A DNA stretch of 64,000 nt, from the NCBI RefSeq assembly GCF_044704955.1, contig NC_091993.1, positions 117,056,001-117,120,000 on the forward strand, in the 5' to 3' direction. Source of the stretch: Pristiophorus japonicus (taxonomy: Eukaryota). Under the pieces are notes generated by a model, which was given only the letters and a program-made list of their open reading frames with translations, searched no databases and was not told the origin of the DNA. Made by a program: the position numbers and the translations under genes. This document shows positions 1,282 through 60,865 of this stretch, piece by piece; the stretch's first letter is position 1; each line of letters begins with the position of its first letter.

Positions 1282-1542
1282 CGTAGTGTATTTGCTTCAA
1301 CGGTTCTTTGCTTAAGAATTCATAGCAACACATTGCTGTTAAGAACGAGTTGGTTTATTAGCAAAAGGTTTAACAATCACACTCCACATTACCAGTTCAT
1401 CCACCAGCCTCACAACCACCTGCCTCATTGTGGATCCCCCGAACCCAACTGGCTGGGGTTTTATTGAGTCTTGTAAACACCATGCGACTGGCTAAGCCAC
1501 TCCCAACTCAACAGCTCTACAAACCTATGAGCATACATTACT
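1282..1542 (-). mobile_element. Solo LTR with unoccupied Tx1 target site
   Basis: Homologous to 5580-5977 plus 9624-9671; near-TSD CTGGC/ATGGC; single CAACAGCTCTACAA at 1509-1522; orientation inferred from AATAAA. Confidence 0.75.
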
Positions 1543-1716
1543 ATGGCCTAGTGTTATGCCTGGTCCTTCTTATGGATCCTTCCCAAGCCTCTGGCCTGAT
1601 TGGCAGAGATCCCGTCCCTTTCAAGCTCCACGGAAGTTAATTGATGGATGAGCCTGCACTGCGGCTGCATAGTTTCATGCTACATGTGCCTGATCGATCC
1701 CATGGATTAGTTTTAG

Positions 1717-4795: not shown

Positions 4796-5679
4796 GTCTG
4801 CTTAAGAGCCCTGTCACATACAAACCTTCCCTTAAATCTATTCCAGATGAGCAAACGGAGCACGTAGCCCAAATTGGCCTAAACTGGGATCATTCACAGA
4901 TAATTCATATTTATTGTGAGAGCCATTTAGACTGACCTGTTGGCTGTGCAAAACAATAAATCTATCCTTATATGTAGTGTAACAGCCGGACGAGGATAAA
5001 CTAATACGTCTGAAAATGACTCTTGACAATATTAGCAGGTGAACACCGAGGCCTACAAGTTCATAGAAGCCTTTACAAGCATAAAATGGGCGCCTGAGCG
5101 TCCAATATGGTCGGCGGCGTGTGGTACATATTCCGTGCCAGATGTGCACCGCCTGACATAGTATTAAAGGGTCCAGTATAGTGCTGAGGATCCGTGCTTG
5201 AAACATTTGCAATTCGGAGGCCCCCTGCTTCCTTGAGGCCCCCATTCCCAAAACTGGACTACCCTGAACATAGCCTGCACCAGGCTGCTGCATTCAGGAT
5301 ATCCAGGTCTACGTGCGGCCCAACCAATGGTCCTTAAGCGGACTGCTGGAGGCCGCCACCAAGAATTAGGTTTAAAAATAAATTCTCGCCTGAATAAGGA
5401 GCCGGGAGCAGCAAGTGTAGGGAAGACAATTGCCGGCTCCCTCCAGATCATCTCCCCATCCACACCCCCCATCCCACCCCCAATCGCCCCCAGTAGCCCC
5501 CAATCACCCCTAATTGCCCCCAATCGAAGTGGTTCGAGCTATAGAAACAGACGCCTCAGTAGTTCCTGGTGGTTGGACCTGTAATGTATTTGCTTCATGG
5601 GCTGTTTGCTTAAGAATTCATGGCAACACATTTCTATTAAGAACTACTTGGCTTATTAACAAAGGTTCAACAATCACAC

Positions 5680-5832
5680 GGCCTTATGGCTAAAGGGATC
5701 ACAGGGTATGGAGAGAAAGCAGGAATGAGGTACTGAAGTTGTATGATCAGCCATGATCATATTGAATGGTGGTGCAGGCTTGAAGGGCCGAATGGCCTAC
5801 TCCTGCACCTATTTTCTATGTTTCTATGTTTC
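5680..5832 (+). mobile_element. CR1 3' UTR fragment nested in the solo LTR
   Basis: GGGTATGGAGAGAAAGCAGG..GCAGGCTTGAAGGGCCGAATGGCC..(TTTCTATG)n. Confidence 0.8.
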
Positions 5833-5977
5833 TCCACCGCACATTACCAGTTCATCCACTAGGCTCGCAATTGCATACCTCATCGTGGATGACTTAGACT
5901 CAACTGACTGGGGTCTTATTGCATCCTGTGAACATCGCGTGACTGGTGAAGTCACTCACAATGCAACAGCCGTACAA

Positions 5978-6564
5978 CTATTTCAAGTAACATTCAATCA
6001 AGTGCCCCCTTTTAGTAAAGGCACTAGAACCCTCAAATTTCCAAATAAAACTTTAAAGGAAACTTAAATCAAATTCAGCCCGACTCTCTTCTGCGTGCTC
6101 CATCTTCAGGGACACCATGGCTCAGATGTAACCGCAGAAGAGAGTCGGGCTGAATGACCCCCCTCGACTGCCCACTGCTTGGACCGGTTAATGGCCCCCT
6201 TGGCCAGGCCCAGGAGCAGTCCTACGAGGAGGCCCTCCGACCTGCCCGCTCCTCTCTGCAACAGGTGCCCAAAGATCAGGAGCTTGGGACTGAAGTGCAG
6301 GCAAAAATCCAGGAGTAGTCTCTTCAAGTAAAGGAATAGGGGATGTAACCTCACACATTGAAGATAGACATGGAAGATGGACTCTTCCAGACCGCAGAAA
6401 TTGTAGGCGGCTCAGGAGTTTGTGAACCGACTTAAAAACTTATTGCATGGGACTGGTCCATGCAACATCCTCCAGACCAAATCCCCAATAAATAAAGGGA
6501 GGACTGCCACATAGAGAACCCACCATTGGGGAGCCCGGCCTCCTACGGAAGGCAAGATGGCACA
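5978..6564 (-). mobile_element. Tx1-like (L1 clade) 3' fragment, unit 1 (most decayed)
   Basis: Homologous to units 3 and 5, with stops and deletions; flanked by target copies 5964-5977 and 6565-6578. Confidence 0.85.
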
Positions 6565-6578
6565 CAACAGCTCTACAA

Positions 6579-7241
6579 CTATTTTAAAGTACCGTAAATA
6601 CAAGTGCCCCTTATTAAAGGGGCACTAAAACCGACAAATTAAACAAATTAAACTTTTTGAAATACGGTCAAATTAAAATTTGGTTGCCGGGGATGATGAT
6701 GCACTCCAGTCCCTCCGGTGCCCACCTCTCGCGGAAGGCCACGAGCGTACCGGTGGACACCGCGTGCTCCATCTCCAGGGACACCCTGGCCCGGATGTAA
6801 CCACGGAAGAGAGGCAGGCAGTCAGGCTGAACGACCCCCTCGACCCGCCTGCTGCCTGGACCGAATGATGGCCCCCTTGGCCGTGCCCAGGAGCAGTCCC
6901 ACGAGGAGGCCCTCGGACCTACCCGCTCCCCTCCGCACAGGATGCCCAAAGATCAGGAGCGTGGGACTGAAGTGCAGCCAGAATTTGAAGAGCCGCCCCT
7001 TCAAATAATGGAAGAGGGGCTGCAACCTCGCACATTGTATGTAAACGTGGAACACGGACTCTTCCAGACTGCAAAAATTGCAGGCGGCCTTGGAGTCCGT
7101 GAACCGACTTCAAAACCTATTGCACGGGACTGCTCCGTGCACCACCCTCCAGGCCAAGTCCCCAATAAATAGAGAGAGGACTCCCGCGTAGAGACCAGTC
7201 CATTGGGGACCCCCGCCTCCTCCGGACAGCAAGACGGTGCA
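6579..7241 (-). mobile_element. Tx1-like 3' fragment, unit 2
   Basis: Frameshifted zf-RVT region; target copy at 7242-7255. Confidence 0.9.
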
Positions 7242-7255
7242 CAACAGCTCTACAA

Positions 7256-8012
7256 CTATTTTGAGTTGTATCAGTAATCAAGTGCCCCCTGATTAAAGAG
7301 GGGGGGGGCTGTGGGGGGCACACTCCAAAAACTTTTCAAGTGCCCCTTGGTTTTTTTTGAGGGAGTGCCCCCTGGTTAAAAGAGGGTGAGGGGGCACTAA
7401 AACCGACAATTTAAACAAATTAAACTTTAGACATTAAAATCAAATTAAAATTTGGTTGCCGGGGGTGATGATGCACTCGAGTCCCTCCGGCGCCCACCTC
7501 TCGCGGAAGGCCGCGAGCGTACCGGTGGACACCGCGTGCTCCAACTCCAGGGACACCCTGGCGCGGATGTACGCATGGAAGAGAGGCAGGCAGTCAGGCT
7601 GAACGACCCCCTCGACCGCCCGCTGCCTGGACCGGCTGATGGCACCCTTGGCCGTGCCCAGGAGCAGTCCTACGAGGAGGCCCTCAGACTTACTCGCTCC
7701 CCTCAGCACAGGGTGCCCAAAGATCAGGAGTGTGGGACTGAAGTGCAACCAGAAATTGAGGAGCAGCCCCTTTAAATAATGGAACAGGAGCTGCAACCTT
7801 GTGCATTTGATAAAAACATGGAACACGGACTTTTCCAGACCGCAGAAATTGCACGCAGCCTGGGAGCCCGTGAACCGACTTAAAAATTTATTGCACGGGA
7901 CTGCTCCATGCACCACCCTCCAGGCCAAGTCCCCGATAAATAGAGGGAGGACTCCCGCGTAGAGTGTACTCCATCGGGGACCCTTGCCTCCTCCGGACGG
8001 CAGGATGGTGCG
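7256..8012 (-). mobile_element. Tx1-like 3' fragment, unit 3 (open frame 7440-8012)
   Basis: DLAWRVVHGAVPCN..ACNFCGLEKSVFHVFIKC (zf-RVT CCHC of L1/Tx1 ORF2); target copy at 8013-8026. Confidence 0.9.
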
Positions 8013-8026
8013 CAACAGCTCTACAA

Positions 8027-8807
8027 CTCTTTTGTTGAAACAAAATAAAGATTAACTCAAGTGCCCCCTTATTAAAAGCTGTGAGACACTCCAAACACTT
8101 TTCAGTGCCCTTTTTTTTTGGTTTTTTTTGTGGTTTTTTTTTTTGGGCACCTAGAGACAAATTATACAAGTGCCCCCTGCCTCGGGGGACACTAAAACCA
8201 GCAATAAAACAAATTAAACTTTAAAACATATAAAATCAAATTAGAATTTGGTTGACGGGGGTGATAATGCACTCCAGTCCCTCCGGCGCCCACCTCTCGC
8301 GGAAGGCCGCGAGCGTACCGGTGGACACCGCGTGCTCCAACTTCAGGGACACCCTGGCCCGGATGTAGGCGCGGAAGAGAGGCAGGCAGTCAGGCTGAAC
8401 GACCCCCTCGACCGCTCGCTGCCTGGACCGGCTGATGGCATCCTTGGCCGTGCCAGGAGCAGTCCTACGAGGAGGCCCTCGGACCTACCCGCTCCCCTCT
8501 GCACCGGGTGCCCAAAGATCAGGAGTGTGGGACTGAAGTGCAACCAGAATTTGAGGAGCAGCCCCTTCAAATAATGAAACAGGGGCTGCAACCTCGTACA
8601 TTCCATAAAAACATGGAACACGGACTCCTCCAGACCGCAGAAATTGCAGGCGGCCTGGGAGACCGTGAACCGGCTTAAAAATTGGTTGCACGGGACTGCT
8701 CCGTGCACCACCCTCCAGGCCAAGTCTCCGATAAATAGTGGGAGGACTCCCGCGTAGAGTGCACTCCATCGGGGACCCCCGCCTCCTCCGGACGGCAGGA
8801 TGGTGCG
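8027..8807 (-). mobile_element. Tx1-like 3' fragment, unit 4 (one 1-nt frameshift)
   Basis: Same zf-RVT sequence; target copy at 8808-8821. Confidence 0.9.
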
Positions 8808-8821
8808 CAACAGCTCTACAA

Positions 8822-9623
8822 CTCTTTTAGAGGAGACAAAATAAAACATTTAAATCAAGTACCTCCCAATCTGGGGGACCACTCCAAACATTTTCCAATG
8901 CCCTTTTTTTTTTTTTTGTATTTTTGTAGTTTTTTTTGTGGTTTTTTTTGGGCATTAAAATCGTATATTTTACAAGTGCCCCCTATAAAAGGAGAGGGGG
9001 ACACTAAAAACCCGGCAATTAAAACAAATTAAACCTTAAAACATATAAAGTCAAATTAAAATTTGGTTGCCGGGGGTGATGATGCACTCCAGTCCCTCCG
9101 GTGCCCACCTCTCGCGGAAGGCTGCGAGCGTACCGGTGGACACCGCGTGCTCCAACTCTAAGGACACCCTGGCCCGGATGTAGGCGCGGAAGAGAGGCAG
9201 GCAGTCAGGCTGAATGACCCCCTCGACCGCCCGCTGCCTGGACCGGCTGATGGCACCCTTGGCCGTGCCCAGGAGCAGTCCTACGAGGAGGCCCTCGGAC
9301 CTACCCGCTCCCCTCCGCACAGGGTGCCCAAAGATCAGGAGCGTGGGACTGAAGTGCAGCCAGAAATTGAGGAGCAACCCCTTTAAATAATGGAACAGGG
9401 GCTGCAACCTCGCACACTCCATAAAAACATGGAACACGGACTCTTCCAGACCGCAGAAATTGCAGGCGGCATGGGAGCCCGTGAACCGGCTTAAAAATTT
9501 ATTGCACGGGACTGCTCCATGCACCACCCTCCAGGCCAAGTCCCCGATAAATAGTGGGAGGACTCCCGCGTAGAGTGCACTCCATCGGGGACCCCCGCCT
9601 CCTCCGGACGGCAGGATGGTGCG
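8822..9623 (-). mobile_element. Tx1-like 3' fragment, unit 5 (open frame 9051-9623)
   Basis: Uninterrupted frame to the natural stop; target copy at 9624-9637. Confidence 0.9.
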
Positions 9624-9763
9624 CAACAGCTCTACAAACCTATGAGCACACTCACAGGTGCATACATTTCAGGACCCATTGTTAACCTTCATACTGGGGC
9701 TAAAATAGATAAACTTACTGAACACTTTATCAAGAAATCACTTTTTGTATACTGTCTCTCCTC

Positions 9764-11077
9764 TTAATTGAGGTGCTTAATAATCTGATCAATCCAATTT
9801 TTTGCAATAAATTACCATTTTGTATTGCTTGTGTTGCTTAATTCAAATGTTTAGATCATTCCACTATTTAAGGGCAAAACATGACTGAAATAGCATTGAC
9901 TGTGGCACGAAAGGGTGAAATCGGAGGCGGCTGCTACAAAACACATGATGAGTGAACTTGACCTATTGGTGCCGACTGGATGCATATATGGCGCTGATTT
10001 ATCTCCTCCTGTGATTTTCCTCCTGTGTGAGTTGGCGGAGGTTCTGATCTCAGAGCGATCGATTGACGTTGGGGAAGTGACACGATTACAACAAAACAGC
10101 TGGCACCTAAAAACCTTCAGTGGGAACATTTTGTACAATTCCATTTCTCCCCCCCCCCTCCACCCCCACACCCTGCCCCCCGCAATTGCCCCCCCAACTC
10201 CATTCCTGATGTAGCGGTGAGATGTTGCTCTGAAAATCCAGTGTCCACCACGGTCCCCTTTTATGCAAATGAACGTTTCCCCGGGATTTGACACAGAGTC
10301 ACTGTCAGAGCAGACAGGTGGGAATTTGTTGGCTCAAATATTTACATTTGGGTAGAATAAACTAAATAGAAATACATTTGTCTTCTTACCTTCAGAAACT
10401 TTCAATTCGATCGAAAACTTTTCACTTGCTTGAAATGTTAATTGAGGTACTTAAATAATTCAATCAGTCAATAGTTTAGCATTACATTCCCTCTTTGTAT
10501 TGCTTGAGTAGCTTAATTCAAATGATGAGACCATTCCATTATATATAAGGGAAAAAAATTAATGGAATTAGCATTGACTGAGGCCCGGAAGGAAGAAATC
10601 AGAGGCAACTACAACAAAACACATGACGCGTGAATTTGACCTTTTGGTGCCTACTGGGTGCAGATATAGTGCTGACGTCCCTCCTCCTGTGTGAGTTGGC
10701 AGAGGTTCTGATCTCAGAGTGATTGGCAGCTAAAACCTTTCAGTAGGGACATTATTTTGCAAGTTCATTCCCCTTCCACGCACCCCCTCCCCCACCCCGC
10801 AGCGACTCATCACCATTCCTGATGGTGGCGAGATGTTGTTCTGGAAATCCAATGTCCCCCATGGGCTGGGCACCCCAGTAACTGGGTGCCCACCCCTTTT
10901 ATGCAAATGAACGTTTCCCCGGGATTTGACACAGAGTCACTGTCAGAACAGACAGGTGGGAATTTGTTGGCTCAAATGTTTACATTTTGGTAGCATAAAC
11001 TAAATAGAAATACATTTGTCTTCTTACCTTCAGAAACTTTCAATTCGATCGAAAACTTTTCATTTGCTTGAGATGTT
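9764..11077. repeat. Two-copy tandem duplication (about 640-675 bp) including the 3' end and donor of the V exon
   Basis: 9764-10438 aligns with 10438-11077; partial exon QASEKFSIELKVSE|gtaag at 10390-10435. Confidence 0.85.
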
Positions 11078-34714: not shown

Positions 34715-36235
34715 TGTGGAAGTGGCCCTAGAAATAGTAGATGCATTGGTGGTCATTTTCCAAAATTCCATGGACTCTGGATCAGTTCCTATGGATTGGA
34801 GGGTAGCTAATGTAACCCCACTTTTTAAAAAAGGAGGGAGAGAGAAAACAGGGAATTACAGACCAGTTAGCTTGACATCAGTGGTGGGGAAAATGCTGGA
34901 ATCAATTTGTAAAGATGTAATAGCAGAACATTTGGAAAGCAGTGAAAGGATCGGTCCAAGTCAGCATGGATTTATGATATGGAAATCATGCTTGACAAAT
35001 CTTCTATAGTTTTTTGAGGATGTAACTAGTAGAGTGGATAAGGGAGAACCAGTGGATGTGGTGTATTTGTATTTTCAAAAGGCTTTTGACAAGGTCCCAC
35101 ACAAGAGATTAGTGTGTAAAATTAAGGCACATGGTATTGGGTATAATGTATTGACATGGATGGAGAACTGGTTGGCAGACAGGAAGCAGAGAGTGGGAAT
35201 AAACGGGTCCTTTTCAGAATGGCAGGCAGTGACTAGTGGGGTGCCGCAAAGTTCAGTGCTGAGACCCCAGCTATTTACAATATACGTTAATGATTTAGAC
35301 GAAGGAATTGAATGTAATATCGCCAAGTTTGCAGATGAACTAAGCTGGGTGGCAGTGTGAGCTGTGAGGAGGATGCTAAGAGGCTGCAGGGTGACTTGGA
35401 CAGGTTAGGTGAGTGGGCAAATGCATGGCAGATGCAGTATAATGTGGATAAATGTGAGGTTATCCACTTTGGTGGCAAAAACAGGAAGGCAGATTATTAT
35501 CTGAATGGTGCACCCAGGTGCAGCGAGAATGGGTGTCATGGTACATCAATCACTGGAGGTGGGCATGCAGGTACAGCAGGCAGTAAGGGGGGGCAGGTGG
35601 CAAGCTGACCTTCGTAGCGAGAGGATTTGAGTGTAGGAGCGTGGAGGTCTTGCTGCAGTTGTGTGGGGCCTTGGTGGGACCACGCCTTGAGTGTTGTGTG
35701 CAGTTTTGGTCTCGAAGGACGTGCTTGCTATTGGGGGATTGCAGTGGGGGTTTGCCAGACTGATTCCCGGGATGGCAGGACTGACATATGAACAGGTACT
35801 GGATCGGTTGGGCTTGTGCTCACTGGAGTTTGGAGGAATGGGAGGGGATCGCATGGAAACATATAGAATTGTGACGGGACTGGACAGGTTGGATGCGGAA
35901 AGAATGTTCCCAATGTTGGGGAGGTGCGGAACCAGAGGTCACGATCTAGGGCTGGGGGGGTGGGCCATTTGGGACCGGGATGAGAAGAAACTTTTTCACC
36001 CAGACAGTGGTGGGCCTGTGGAGTTCTCCACCACAGAGAATTGTTGAGTCTGGTTCATTGGATGTGTTCAAGAGGGAGTTAGATGTGGCCCTTACGGCTA
36101 AGAGGATCAGGGGGTATGGAGAGAGGGCGGGAGTGGGGTACTGAGGTTGCATGATTGGCCATGATCGTGTTGGGTGGCGGTGCAGGCTCGGGGGGCCGAA
36201 TGGCCTGCTCCTGCACCTATTTTCTATGTTTCTAG
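34715..36235 (+). mobile_element. CR1 LINE RT region with an A>G-hypermutated 3' half
   Basis: NYRPVSLTS, QHGF, KAFDKVPH, GVPQ, KFAD; G-enriched 3' half relative to the sister copy at 60334-60865. Confidence 0.9.
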
Positions 36236-36476
36236 GTCCATGCAGCAGAGCAGGTCTCCAGTCATGCTAGTTAACCCTTGCCACTGGATAAAGGCCTCGC
36301 TCTGTCGAGCCTGTGTGGTGACTGATGTGCAAAAAAATCCACAACACACAGGCATCTTCCACCCCCTCAATTGGAGTTCAGGACTGGAACATCGGGTCCT
36401 CCATTGAAACATCTGTGAATTCTTGTGGAAGCAAGTCATCCTCGTTCGAGGGACCGCCTGTGATGATGATGATGAA
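36236..36476 (+). mobile_element. Short RTE-tailed SINE-like repeat (also about 49987-50345 minus, 50845-51065 plus)
   Basis: Shared GTTAACCCTTGCCACTGG..GTGGAAGCAAGTCATCCTCG..(ATG)n end. Confidence 0.6.
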
Positions 36477-50351: not shown

Positions 50352-50594
50352 TTTGCAGATTTGTTGATCCGTTGAGGTGGGAGTGGCTTAGTCAGTCATG
50401 TGATGTTCACAAGACTCAATAAAACCAGTTGGGTTCAGGGGATCCATGATAAGGTAAGTGGTTGCGAGCCTGGTGGACGAACTGGTAATGTGCAGTGTCA
50501 TTGTTAAACCTTTTGCTAATAAACCAACCAGTTCTTAATAGCAGCATGTTGCAATGAATTCTTCAGCAAAGAACCATGAAGCAAGTACATTGCA
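50352..50594 (+). mobile_element. Third copy of the solo-LTR family, 5'-truncated, with a mutated empty target
   Basis: Reverse complement of 1282-1542; target reads TTGTTGATCCGTTG at 50361-50374. Confidence 0.75.
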
Positions 50595-60165: not shown

Positions 60166-60333
60166 CCAGCACCAAAGCTCCTTCAGCCCTCGGGGCCTGG
60201 CTGCAAATGCTGGCCTTCAAGAAGGTCTGGAAGCAGCTGGCTCGTTTGTCCACTTTATCTCCATGCCGAATTTCTCTGTGGTGATCCTGCTACAATGAAG
60301 ACACCCACACTGCTGCAAAGTGGCCTTAATACA

Positions 60334-60865
60334 GAAACATAGAAACATAGAAAATAGGTGCAGGAGTAGGCCATTCGGCCCTTCGAGCCTGCACTGCCAT
60401 TCAATATGATCATGGCTGATCATGCAACTTCAGTACCCCATTCCTGCTTTCTCTCCATACCCCTTGATCCCTTTAGCCGTAAGGGTCACATCTGACTCCC
60501 TTTTGAATATATCTAATGAACTGGCCTCAACAACTTTCTGTGGTAGAGAATTACACAGGTTCAGATTTCTCTGAGTGAAGAAGTTTCTCCTCATCTCGGT
60601 CCTAAATGGCTTACCCCTTATCCTTGGACTGTGACCCCTGGTTCTGGACTTCCCCAACATCGGGAACATTCTTCCTGCATCTAACCTGTCCAATATTGTC
60701 AGAATGTTATATGTTTCTATGAGATCCCCTCTCATTCTTCTAAATTCCAGTGAATATAAGCCGAGTCGATCCAATCTTATTCCTTATGTAGTCCTGCCAT
60801 CCCGGGAATCAGTCTGGTGAACCATCGCTGCACTCCCTCAATAGCAAGAATGTCCTTCCTCAGAA
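60334..60865 (-). mobile_element. CR1 LINE 3' fragment
   Basis: DRLGLYSLEFRRMRGDLIETY..; (TTTCTATG)n tail. Confidence 0.9.

What the first reader, a model, noticed from the sequence alone, without database searches (positions are those of the whole stretch)
5580..9671. Polarised array of a site-specific Tx1-like element stacked five times in one 14-bp site of a solo LTR
Seen: a solo LTR (TSD GGACC) is split at CAACAGCTCTACAA. This 14-mer occurs six times (5964, 6565, 7242, 8013, 8808, 9624) and separates five same-strand Tx1/L1 ORF2 3' pieces. An intact LTR copy at 1282-1542 has the 14-mer once (1509-1522), so the 14-mer is the target/TSD. Decay is ordered: unit 1 and its outer target are the most mutated, unit 2 is intermediate, and units 3-5 are nearly intact. 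Known: Tx1-group APE elements are often sequence-specific, including for other transposons. Inference: a retrotransposon parasitising an LTR element re-targets the regenerated upstream site each time. This builds a repeat-insert-repeat array that grows from one end and records insertion order.
Basis: partly seen in the sequence, partly recalled or inferred. Interest (0 to 1): 0.88.

Follow-up and report, generated by a model that had tools for sequence, protein, structure and literature searches.

The report
LINE fragments stacked in one LTR site
A jumping gene of the Tx1/L1 type landed five times in a row in the same 14-letter site of another repeat, newest copy at one end; this targeting habit is already known, but all five copies oddly begin at the same letter.

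Summary
CAACAGCTCTACAA occurs at 5964 (2 mismatches), 6565, 7242, 8013, 8808 and 9624, and once in an unoccupied LTR copy (1509). It separates five minus-strand units inside an LTR-like repeat (5580-9671, TSD GGACC). Each unit is the last 190 codons of an L1/Tx1-like ORF2 plus its 3'UTR.

The reading as repeated site-specific insertion is mostly supported.
- Differences between units sit at synonymous sites more than chance allows (dN/dS 0.18-0.41; permutation P<=0.0055).
- Private synonymous changes are about equal in units 2-5 (7,7,7,5). Private nonsynonymous changes fall along the array (16,9,3,1; trend P=0.005).
- The units therefore left a selected, autonomous lineage at different times, oldest on the left. 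One dead fragment duplicated in tandem does not fit.
- Contigs of one run join this LINE to the same site with other 5' ends.

One point is unexplained. All five units start at the same base, just after a conserved Trp codon. My favoured guess, untested, is that the neighbouring unit guides 5' joining by homology.

It is a known kind. Tx1 families that target transposons, LTR elements included, and tandem insertions around a TSD are published (Kojima 2015), as are R1 arrays. This scan has already noted the same LINE/LTR stacking in other windows of this genome.

The parts
5575..5579 (.). left target-site duplication GGACC of the LTR-like host repeat
   Evidence: the same pentamer lies at 9672-9676
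5580..5679 (+). LTR-like host repeat (LTR_A), 5' segment; starts TG
   Evidence: 86% identical to 1283-1382 and 82% to 50594-50492
5680..5837 (+). later insertion of a very abundant SINE-like repeat into LTR_A; not part of the array
   Evidence: absent from LTR_B and LTR_C; contigs of other LTR copies skip about 5677-5839, and its depth is the highest in the stretch; 94.7% identical copy at 60333-60484
5838..5963 (+). LTR_A middle segment, up to the target
   Evidence: aligns to 1385-1508 and to the copy at 50357-50594
5964..5977 (.). outermost and oldest copy of the 14-base target (CAACAGCCGTACAA, 2 changes)
5978..6564 (-). unit 1, the oldest: ORF2 C-terminal piece plus 3'UTR; stops, a 79-column gap in the alignment, and an inverted duplication at 6073-6155
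   Evidence: CpG o/e 0.39; private changes 26 synonymous / 41 nonsynonymous
6565..6578 (.). 14-base target copy
6579..7241 (-). unit 2: short 3'UTR with one GC hairpin; one stop and one frameshift
   Evidence: private changes 7 synonymous / 16 nonsynonymous
7242..7255 (.). 14-base target copy
7256..8012 (-). unit 3: intact 190-codon frame (7440-8012) and a longer 3'UTR with repeated hairpin modules
   Evidence: private changes 7 synonymous / 9 nonsynonymous
8013..8026 (.). 14-base target copy
8027..8807 (-). unit 4: one 1-base deletion in the frame; A-rich 3'UTR; 3' end AAAAGAG
   Evidence: private changes 7 synonymous / 3 nonsynonymous
8808..8821 (.). 14-base target copy
8822..9623 (-). unit 5, the youngest: intact 190-codon frame (9051-9623) and the longest 3'UTR
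   Evidence: private changes 5 synonymous / 1 nonsynonymous
9624..9637 (.). 14-base target copy that keeps the native LTR flank (ACCTATG...); inferred to be the site that is re-used
   Evidence: the re-use is inference
9638..9671 (+). LTR_A 3' segment; ends CA
   Evidence: 96% identical to 1509-1536 over the first 28 bases of 9624-9671; other copies run on unlike from about 9668 (table 7)
9672..9676 (.). right target-site duplication GGACC
1283..1543 (+). unoccupied LTR copy (LTR_B) with the 14-mer once at 1509-1522; TGGCC on both sides
50357..50594 (-). unoccupied, diverged LTR copy (LTR_C); the site reads CAACGGATCAACAA

Best explanation
A site-specific non-LTR retrotransposon of the L1/Tx1 group inserted five separate times, by target-primed reverse transcription, into one 14-base site of an LTR-like repeat. 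It lies in antisense orientation to that repeat.

Each insertion duplicates the 14 bases. Only the copy that still has the native LTR flank (on the + strand ...CTACAA|ACCTATG, now at 9624-9643) remains a good substrate for the first nick. New units are therefore always added at that end. The array reads oldest (unit 1, left) to youngest (unit 5, right).

Shown:
- the identical 14-base spacers, and the native single copy of the 14-mer in empty LTRs;
- the selection signature and its gradient along the array;
- 3'UTR versions that differ between units.

Inferred:
- that a nick requirement for the native flank is the cause of the polarity;
- the cause of the identical 5' end.

For the identical 5' end I favour, at about 0.3, the following. 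The first insertion was truncated at random. Each later cDNA, copied from an active full-length element, then paired with the resident neighbouring unit. The join was resolved where homology ends, so that one unit plus one 14-mer was added each time.

Two alternatives for the 5' end remain. One is a fixed-length 3'-coterminal RNA made from full-length elements (about 0.3). The other is recurrent microhomology with the 14-base overhang (about 0.1).
For: (1) The spacers are the LTR's own sequence, present once in the two empty copies.

(2) Differences between units are enriched at synonymous sites. Nei-Gojobori dN/dS is 0.18-0.41. In permutations that keep base and CpG context, P is 0-0.0055 for every pair among units 2-5.

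(3) Private changes are 7 synonymous / 16 nonsynonymous in unit 2, 7/9 in unit 3, 7/3 in unit 4 and 5/1 in unit 5. Synonymous counts are flat and nonsynonymous counts fall with position (Cochran-Armitage P=0.005). Units 4 and 5 together have 4 nonsynonymous of 16, against a neutral expectation of 0.70 (P=0.0003).

(4) Unit 1 has CpG o/e 0.39 against 0.68-0.75 in the others, and its outer 14-mer has 2 changes.

(5) The 3'UTRs form a nested series: one hairpin in units 1-2, extra modules in units 3-5, and an A-rich expansion with a GAG end in units 4-5. Positions inside the unit-specific 3'UTRs are covered by many other contigs, far above the unique flanks (tables 2-4).

(6) Contigs of run X16 join LINE positions 7055, 8397 and 7268 to 9624-9634 with 8, 8 and 1 filler bases. 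These are insertions at the same LTR site elsewhere, with other 5' ends (tables 5, 5c).

(7) There is precedent. Tx1 families target transposons, LTR retrotransposons included, and tandem SINEU-3 copies sandwich a 16-base TSD through sequential insertion (PMC4494074). R1 arrays carry an rDNA TSD between units (PMC5932611).
Against: All five units have exactly the same 5' end. For independent TPRT events this is unexpected. Published work uses distinct 5' truncations as the mark of independent insertion, and shared ones point to unequal exchange.

Tajima relative-rate tests are not significant, and counts per unit are small.

No outgroup copy from elsewhere in the genome could be aligned, so units could not be placed among genomic subfamilies.

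Occupancy of the site across the LTR family is unknown; 2 of 3 copies in the window are empty.

The three supporting contigs come from one run of unknown kind.
Confidence: 0.65

Rival explanations
1. One 5'-truncated insertion with a 14-base TSD was amplified locally by unequal exchange or slippage between the flanking repeats. The copies then diverged neutrally, in the way TE-derived satellites arise.
For: All units have an identical 5' end and identical spacer length. This route is documented for R1 and hobo arrays (PMC5932611). Within the window the units are each other's only relatives.
Against: The divergence is not neutral. Units 4 and 5 have 4 nonsynonymous of 16 private changes (P=0.0003 against neutral). 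There are almost no shared-derived sites among units 2-5, apart from the split of units 1-2 from units 3-5. The 3'UTR architectures differ between units, and these versions are multi-copy elsewhere.
Confidence: 0.07
2. The units are full-length copies of a short non-autonomous element: a fixed-length derivative of the LINE's 3' end, mobilised in trans by the site-specific LINE. It inserted sequentially into the same site.
For: It explains the identical 5' end without further assumptions. In the DNA runs the depth over the units falls only moderately towards the 5' end, so many genomic copies reach it (table 2). SINEs that share Tx1 targets and stack in tandem are known (PMC4494074).
Against: A lineage that carries only a headless ORF fragment should evolve neutrally, yet the sources of units 3-5 were under purifying selection on this coding piece. 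No start codon or promoter-like head is present at the 5' end. The idea survives only if the short RNA is made afresh from full-length elements each time.
Confidence: 0.18
3. A mixed origin. One or two insertions were expanded by unequal exchange. The units were later overwritten by cDNA-mediated or ectopic gene conversion from younger active copies.
For: It would reconcile the fixed 5' boundary with sequences that carry a selection signature.
Against: It needs several rare events. It predicts mosaic units and no ordered gradient, yet differences are spread evenly along the units and the order is monotonic.
Confidence: 0.08

Closest known systems
Crocodilian Tx1 families (Tx1-Mar into Mariner-N4_AMi; Tx1-8_Crp and Tx1-4_AMi into LTR retrotransposons) and their SINEU-3 partner (Kojima 2015, PMC4494074)
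   Same: A LINE of the Tx1 group that inserts at a preferred site inside another transposon family. The TSD is long (16 bases there, 14 here). Tandem copies sandwich one TSD and are read as sequential insertions.
   Different: This is another host and another target sequence. There are five stacked units with a measurable age order. All units share one 5' end although they are ORF2 fragments and not SINEs. Membership in the Tx1 clade was not tested by RT phylogeny here.
Tx1L in Tx1D of Xenopus laevis (as summarised in PMC4494074)
   Same: A non-LTR element that is specific for a site within another mobile element.
   Different: The target there is a DNA transposon. I know of no stacked, ordered arrays described there (own knowledge, not checked).
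R1 tandem arrays in Drosophila melanogaster (Roiha 1981; McGurk & Barbash 2018, PMC5932611)
   Same: A site-specific LINE in head-to-tail copies, separated by an identical duplication of the target (33 nt of rDNA).
   Different: The R1 array is explained as a double insertion followed by unequal exchange. Here the selection signature shows separate retrotransposition events for the later units. The element clade and the target also differ.
Homology-assisted 5' integration of R2 (Fujimoto 2004, cited in PMC12203849 and PMC4494074)
   Same: The 5' junction of a site-specific LINE can be set by homology with the target instead of by random end joining. This is the mechanism I propose for the fixed unit length.
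   Different: In R2 the homology comes from co-transcribed target RNA. Here it would come from the resident neighbouring unit. This is inference only.

Membership tests
Tx1 clade of non-LTR retrotransposons (L1 superfamily) | ORF2 with an APE-type endonuclease and a reverse transcriptase | tested here: inconclusive
   The units hold only the last 190 codons. No longer copy is in the window. The nearest full-length relatives (about 1300 aa) have Exo_endo_phos + RVT_1 + zf-RVT.
Tx1 clade of non-LTR retrotransposons (L1 superfamily) | C-terminal Cys/His zinc knuckle of L1/Tx1-type ORF2 | tested here: met
   CNFCGLEESVFHVFMEC, which is CX2CX7HX4C. Pfam zf-RVT gives E=1.4e-5 and 26.1 bits, just under the 27.5 cut-off.
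Tx1 clade of non-LTR retrotransposons (L1 superfamily) | placement within the Tx1 clade by RT phylogeny | not testable with these tools
   No RT sequence of this element was seen, and no reference set was at hand. The only hint is that a 34%-identical full-length relative shares a cluster with an Oryzias protein that NCBI names 'transposon TX1 uncharacterized 149 kDa protein'.
Target-specific LINE | independent insertions at the same sequence in different copies of the target | tested here: inconclusive
   There are five events at one locus. Three contigs of one run join this LINE to the same LTR site with other 5' ends.
Sequential-insertion tandem (TSD sandwich) | exactly one TSD-length copy of the target between neighbouring units | tested here: met
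   There are six 14-mers around five units, with the junctions in register.
Sequential-insertion tandem (TSD sandwich) | units of independent origin, usually shown by distinct 5' truncations | tested here: inconclusive
   Distinct truncations are not seen; all 5' ends are the same. Independent origin is supported instead by the selection signature, by its gradient, and by the different 3'UTR versions.
TE-derived satellite by unequal exchange | units diverge neutrally from one founder and are each other's closest kin | tested here: not met
   There is a non-neutral excess of synonymous differences. Kinship relative to other genomic copies was not testable.
Solo LTR | TG...CA termini and a 4-6 base TSD; derivation from an LTR retrotransposon | tested here: inconclusive
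   TG/CA termini and a 5-base TSD GGACC are present. LTR_B is flanked by TGGCC on both sides. No internal retrotransposon region or paired LTR was seen, so 'LTR-like repeat' is the safer name.

The most novel reading that the evidence does not exclude
Arrays of this LINE grow by a homology-guided form of target-primed reverse transcription. The first, randomly truncated insertion sets the unit length. Each later cDNA from an active full-length element pairs with the resident neighbouring unit and is trimmed where homology ends. Every array would then have its own constant 5' boundary, while its units remain a dated record of the active lineage.
Probability: 0.25. Interest if true: 0.65.

Novelty: new member of a known kind. 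Interest (0 to 1): 0.45.

Why it matters
It adds a clear case of a LINE that parasitises one exact site of another repeat in a jawed vertebrate.

It also shows a simple way to date stacked insertions from the window alone. Synonymous private changes run like a clock, while nonsynonymous private changes count the time since the copy left the selected lineage.

The part worth following is the identical 5' end of copies that demonstrably came from an active lineage. If the neighbouring unit guides 5' joining, this is natural evidence for homology-directed completion of retrotransposition. That question bears on LINE mechanism and on current attempts to use site-specific retrotransposons for gene insertion.

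Tried and rejected
No DNA of related copies or their flanks could be read.
- Read laying laid 140,000-220,000 contigs per DNA run, and the output overflowed. Loose ends and joints at the unit boundaries were not listed. The 5'-end spectrum and the site occupancy stayed unknown.
- The search for homologous proteins gave only 7 fragmentary relatives of at most 67% identity.
- A scan of JGI metagenome contigs for the 14-mer plus its LTR flank found one plant PPR gene, a chance match.
- A genome contigs protein scan found nothing. A viral-contig scan for the junction found nothing.
- The search of earlier findings by sequence gave a blank.
- Rfam gave nothing above gathering. The weak MIR7533 hit at 6074-6154 is the inverted duplication in unit 1.
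- I considered that the 14-mer might be native ORF2 sequence, since it reads VVELL in frame. I rejected this because eight relatives read ...PDTxW|R... at that point.
- I tested whether neighbouring units are more alike near their 5' ends, which would be a trace of conversion. There is no clear signal.
- Tajima relative-rate tests were not significant.
Full report
**What is there**

The window holds CAACAGCTCTACAA at 1509, 6565, 7242, 8013, 8808 and 9624, and a 2-mismatch copy at 5964. Shuffles give 0.57 matches, and none of 100 reached 7.

The array lies inside an LTR-like repeat, LTR_A, at 5580-9671. LTR_A starts TG and ends CA, and GGACC flanks it at 5575-5579 and 9672-9676. Two further copies of this repeat are in the window:
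- LTR_B (1283-1543) has the 14-mer once and TGGCC on both sides.
- LTR_C (50357-50594, minus strand) reads CAACGGATCAACAA at the site.

Both are unoccupied. The 14-mer is therefore native to the repeat, and the six copies in LTR_A are target-site duplications. LTR_A also carries a later insertion of a very abundant SINE-like repeat at about 5680-5837. The other LTR copies lack it.

**The units**

Five units lie on the minus strand between the 14-mers. They measure 587, 663, 757, 781 and 802 bases.

Each unit is the last 190 codons of an ORF2 followed by a 3'UTR. The ORF2 piece carries a CX2CX7HX4C knuckle (Pfam zf-RVT, E=1.4e-5, just under the cut-off). The 3'UTR ends AAAATAG or AAAAGAG directly at the 14-mer, with no poly(A) tail. 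Every 3'UTR has a GC-rich hairpin (AGUGCCCC...GGGGCACU), and units 3-5 have extra copies of it.

The nearest full-length relatives in the protein libraries are about 1300 aa and have an APE endonuclease, RVT_1 and zf-RVT. One shares a cluster with a protein that NCBI names 'transposon TX1 uncharacterized 149 kDa protein'. 'L1/Tx1-like' is therefore justified. 'Tx1 clade' was not tested.

No other copy of this LINE piece is in the window.

All five units begin at the same base, right after the 14-mer. Eight relatives read ...PDTxW|R... at this point. The units are therefore cut just after a conserved Trp codon, and the 14-mer, which reads VVELL in frame, is not native ORF2 sequence.

Five independent random truncations at one base are not credible. 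McGurk & Barbash used distinct truncations as the mark of double insertion, and shared junctions as the mark of expansion by unequal exchange (PMC5932611). Tandem duplication of one dead fragment was therefore my leading hypothesis at first.

**The test between the hypotheses**

A dead fragment diverges neutrally. The units do not.
- Pairwise dN/dS is 0.18-0.41.
- I moved the observed differences to other positions of the same base and CpG context. The observed number of nonsynonymous changes was reached in at most 0.55% of 2000 permutations, for every pair among units 2-5.
- I polarised changes by the five-way majority. Private synonymous changes are flat across units 2-5 (7, 7, 7, 5). Private nonsynonymous changes fall in array order (16, 9, 3, 1).
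- Unit 1 has 26 synonymous and 41 nonsynonymous private changes.
- The trend is significant (Cochran-Armitage P=0.005). Units 4 and 5 together have 4 nonsynonymous of 16, against a neutral 0.70 (P=0.0003).

Synonymous sites tick at the same rate in live and dead copies. Nonsynonymous changes count the time since a copy left the selected lineage. The result therefore says two things. The sources of the later units were functional elements. The time spent dead decreases from left to right.

Other observations agree:
- Unit 1 is CpG-depleted (o/e 0.39 against 0.68-0.75) and rearranged, and its outer 14-mer carries two changes.
- Among units 2-5, no grouping of units is backed by more than three shared-derived sites; only the split of units 1-2 from units 3-5 has more (ten).
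- The 3'UTRs form a nested series of versions.
- Positions within the unit-specific 3'UTRs are covered by many other contigs of the same organism, orders of magnitude above the unique flanks.

Caveats: the counts are small, relative-rate tests are not significant, and no outgroup copy from elsewhere could be aligned.

**Evidence from outside the window**

Four runs were laid on the stretch: three DNA runs of one sample, and a fourth run of the same coded organism whose kind is not on record (X16). Between 12,000 and 219,000 contigs per run fitted the stretch. Both the LINE piece and the LTR-like repeat are high-copy. Other LTR copies run on unlike from about 9668, which confirms the LTR end.

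In run X16, contigs join LINE positions 7055, 8397 and 7268 to 9624-9634, that is to the 14-mer plus the right LTR part. They carry 8, 8 and 1 filler bases (tables 5 and 5c). These are insertions of the same LINE at the same LTR site elsewhere, with other 5' ends.

The output overflowed, so joints and loose ends at the unit boundaries were not listed. Scans of the other collections found nothing relevant.

Earlier notes of this scan report the same kind of stacking at an LTR site in several other windows of this genome, and a Tx1 element at a CR1 site. I treat these as leads, not as evidence.

**Mechanism**

In element orientation the array reads: LTR right part, 14-mer, U5, 14-mer, U4, 14-mer, U3, 14-mer, U2, 14-mer, U1, 14-mer, LTR left part.

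In target-primed reverse transcription the first nick falls at the upstream edge of the future duplication. On the + strand of the window this is between ...CTACAA and ACCTATG.... After an insertion, only the upstream 14-mer keeps this native junction. All other copies have a unit's 3' end on that side. If the endonuclease reads across the nick, only that copy is re-used, and the array grows at that end. This matches the age order. The argument is an inference from the geometry of TPRT; it was not tested.

**The identical 5' end**

This remains unexplained. I see three candidates.

(a) Homology-guided joining. The first insertion is truncated at random. Later cDNAs, copied from full-length active RNA, pair with the resident neighbouring unit. 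The non-homologous 3' tail is trimmed, and synthesis continues across the 14-mer into the LTR. One unit plus one 14-mer is added. This accounts for the fixed boundary, the exact spacers, the selection signature and the polarity. It is akin to the homology-assisted 5' integration shown for R2 (Fujimoto 2004, cited in PMC12203849, and in PMC4494074). It predicts 5' ends that are constant within arrays and variable between them.

(b) A fixed-length 3'-coterminal RNA made from full-length elements. It predicts one genome-wide 5' end.

(c) Recurrent microhomology with the 14-base overhang. Only one base is demonstrably shared, so this is weak.

A purely non-autonomous short element is unlikely because of the selection signature. 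I found no excess similarity between neighbouring units near their 5' ends.

**Comparison with what is known**

The Tx1 clade is known for target preference. Published examples are Tx1 in Tx1D, Keno in U2 genes, and Kibi and Koshi in microsatellites. Crocodilian Tx1-Mar targets a Mariner family, and Tx1-8_Crp and Tx1-4_AMi target LTR retrotransposons. Tandem SINEU-3 copies that sandwich a 16-base TSD were read as sequential insertions (PMC4494074). R1 arrays carry a 33-nt rDNA duplication between units (PMC5932611).

The present case is a new member of this kind, in another host and with another target. What it adds is a five-step, datable order of insertion, and the fixed 5' end of copies that came from an active lineage.

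**Verdict**

- Observation: confirmed.
- Interpretation: mostly right on targeting and polarity; unproven on clade and on genome-wide specificity; overrated on novelty.
- Interest: moderate, and it rests on the 5'-end puzzle.

Noticed in passing
window 5680-5837; also 60333-60484 (-), 36090-36237 and about ten shorter pieces: A SINE-like repeat is inserted in LTR_A and is absent from the other LTR copies. It is by far the most abundant sequence in the stretch: its summed contig depth is about 15-60 times that of the LINE bins. The copy at 60333-60484 is 94.7% identical, so it looks younger than the LTR.
   Followed up: partly
window 6073-6155: Unit 1 has lost the end of its reading frame. In its place it carries an inverted duplication that forms a long hairpin. 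Rfam gives a weak miRNA-precursor-like hit (MIR7533, 32 bits against a gathering score of 230), most likely only because of the hairpin.
   Followed up: partly
window 8343-8849 (-): An ATG in the last bases of unit 5's 3'UTR is in frame, through the 14-mer (read as VVELL), with the ORF2 piece of unit 4. This gives a 168-aa ORF. The other junctions do not have it, so it is probably chance.
   Followed up: no
window 6579-6672, 7256-7400, 8027-8170, 8822-8965 (-): A GC-rich stem-loop (AGUGCCCC...GGGGCACU) is conserved in the 3'UTR of all units and is multiplied in the younger ones, together with A-rich expansions. It is a candidate recognition element for the reverse transcriptase.
   Followed up: partly
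run X16 laid on window 5400-9900: In this run of unknown kind, depth over each unit is 3-10 times higher at the 3' end of the coding piece than at its 5' end. The DNA runs fall much less, and not at all in some units. It might be an RNA library or a different individual. Depths from contigs cannot settle this.
   Followed up: no
L001 2328-2348: The only metagenome match to the 14-mer plus LTR flank lies in a plant pentatricopeptide-repeat gene. It is a chance match and unrelated.
   Followed up: yes
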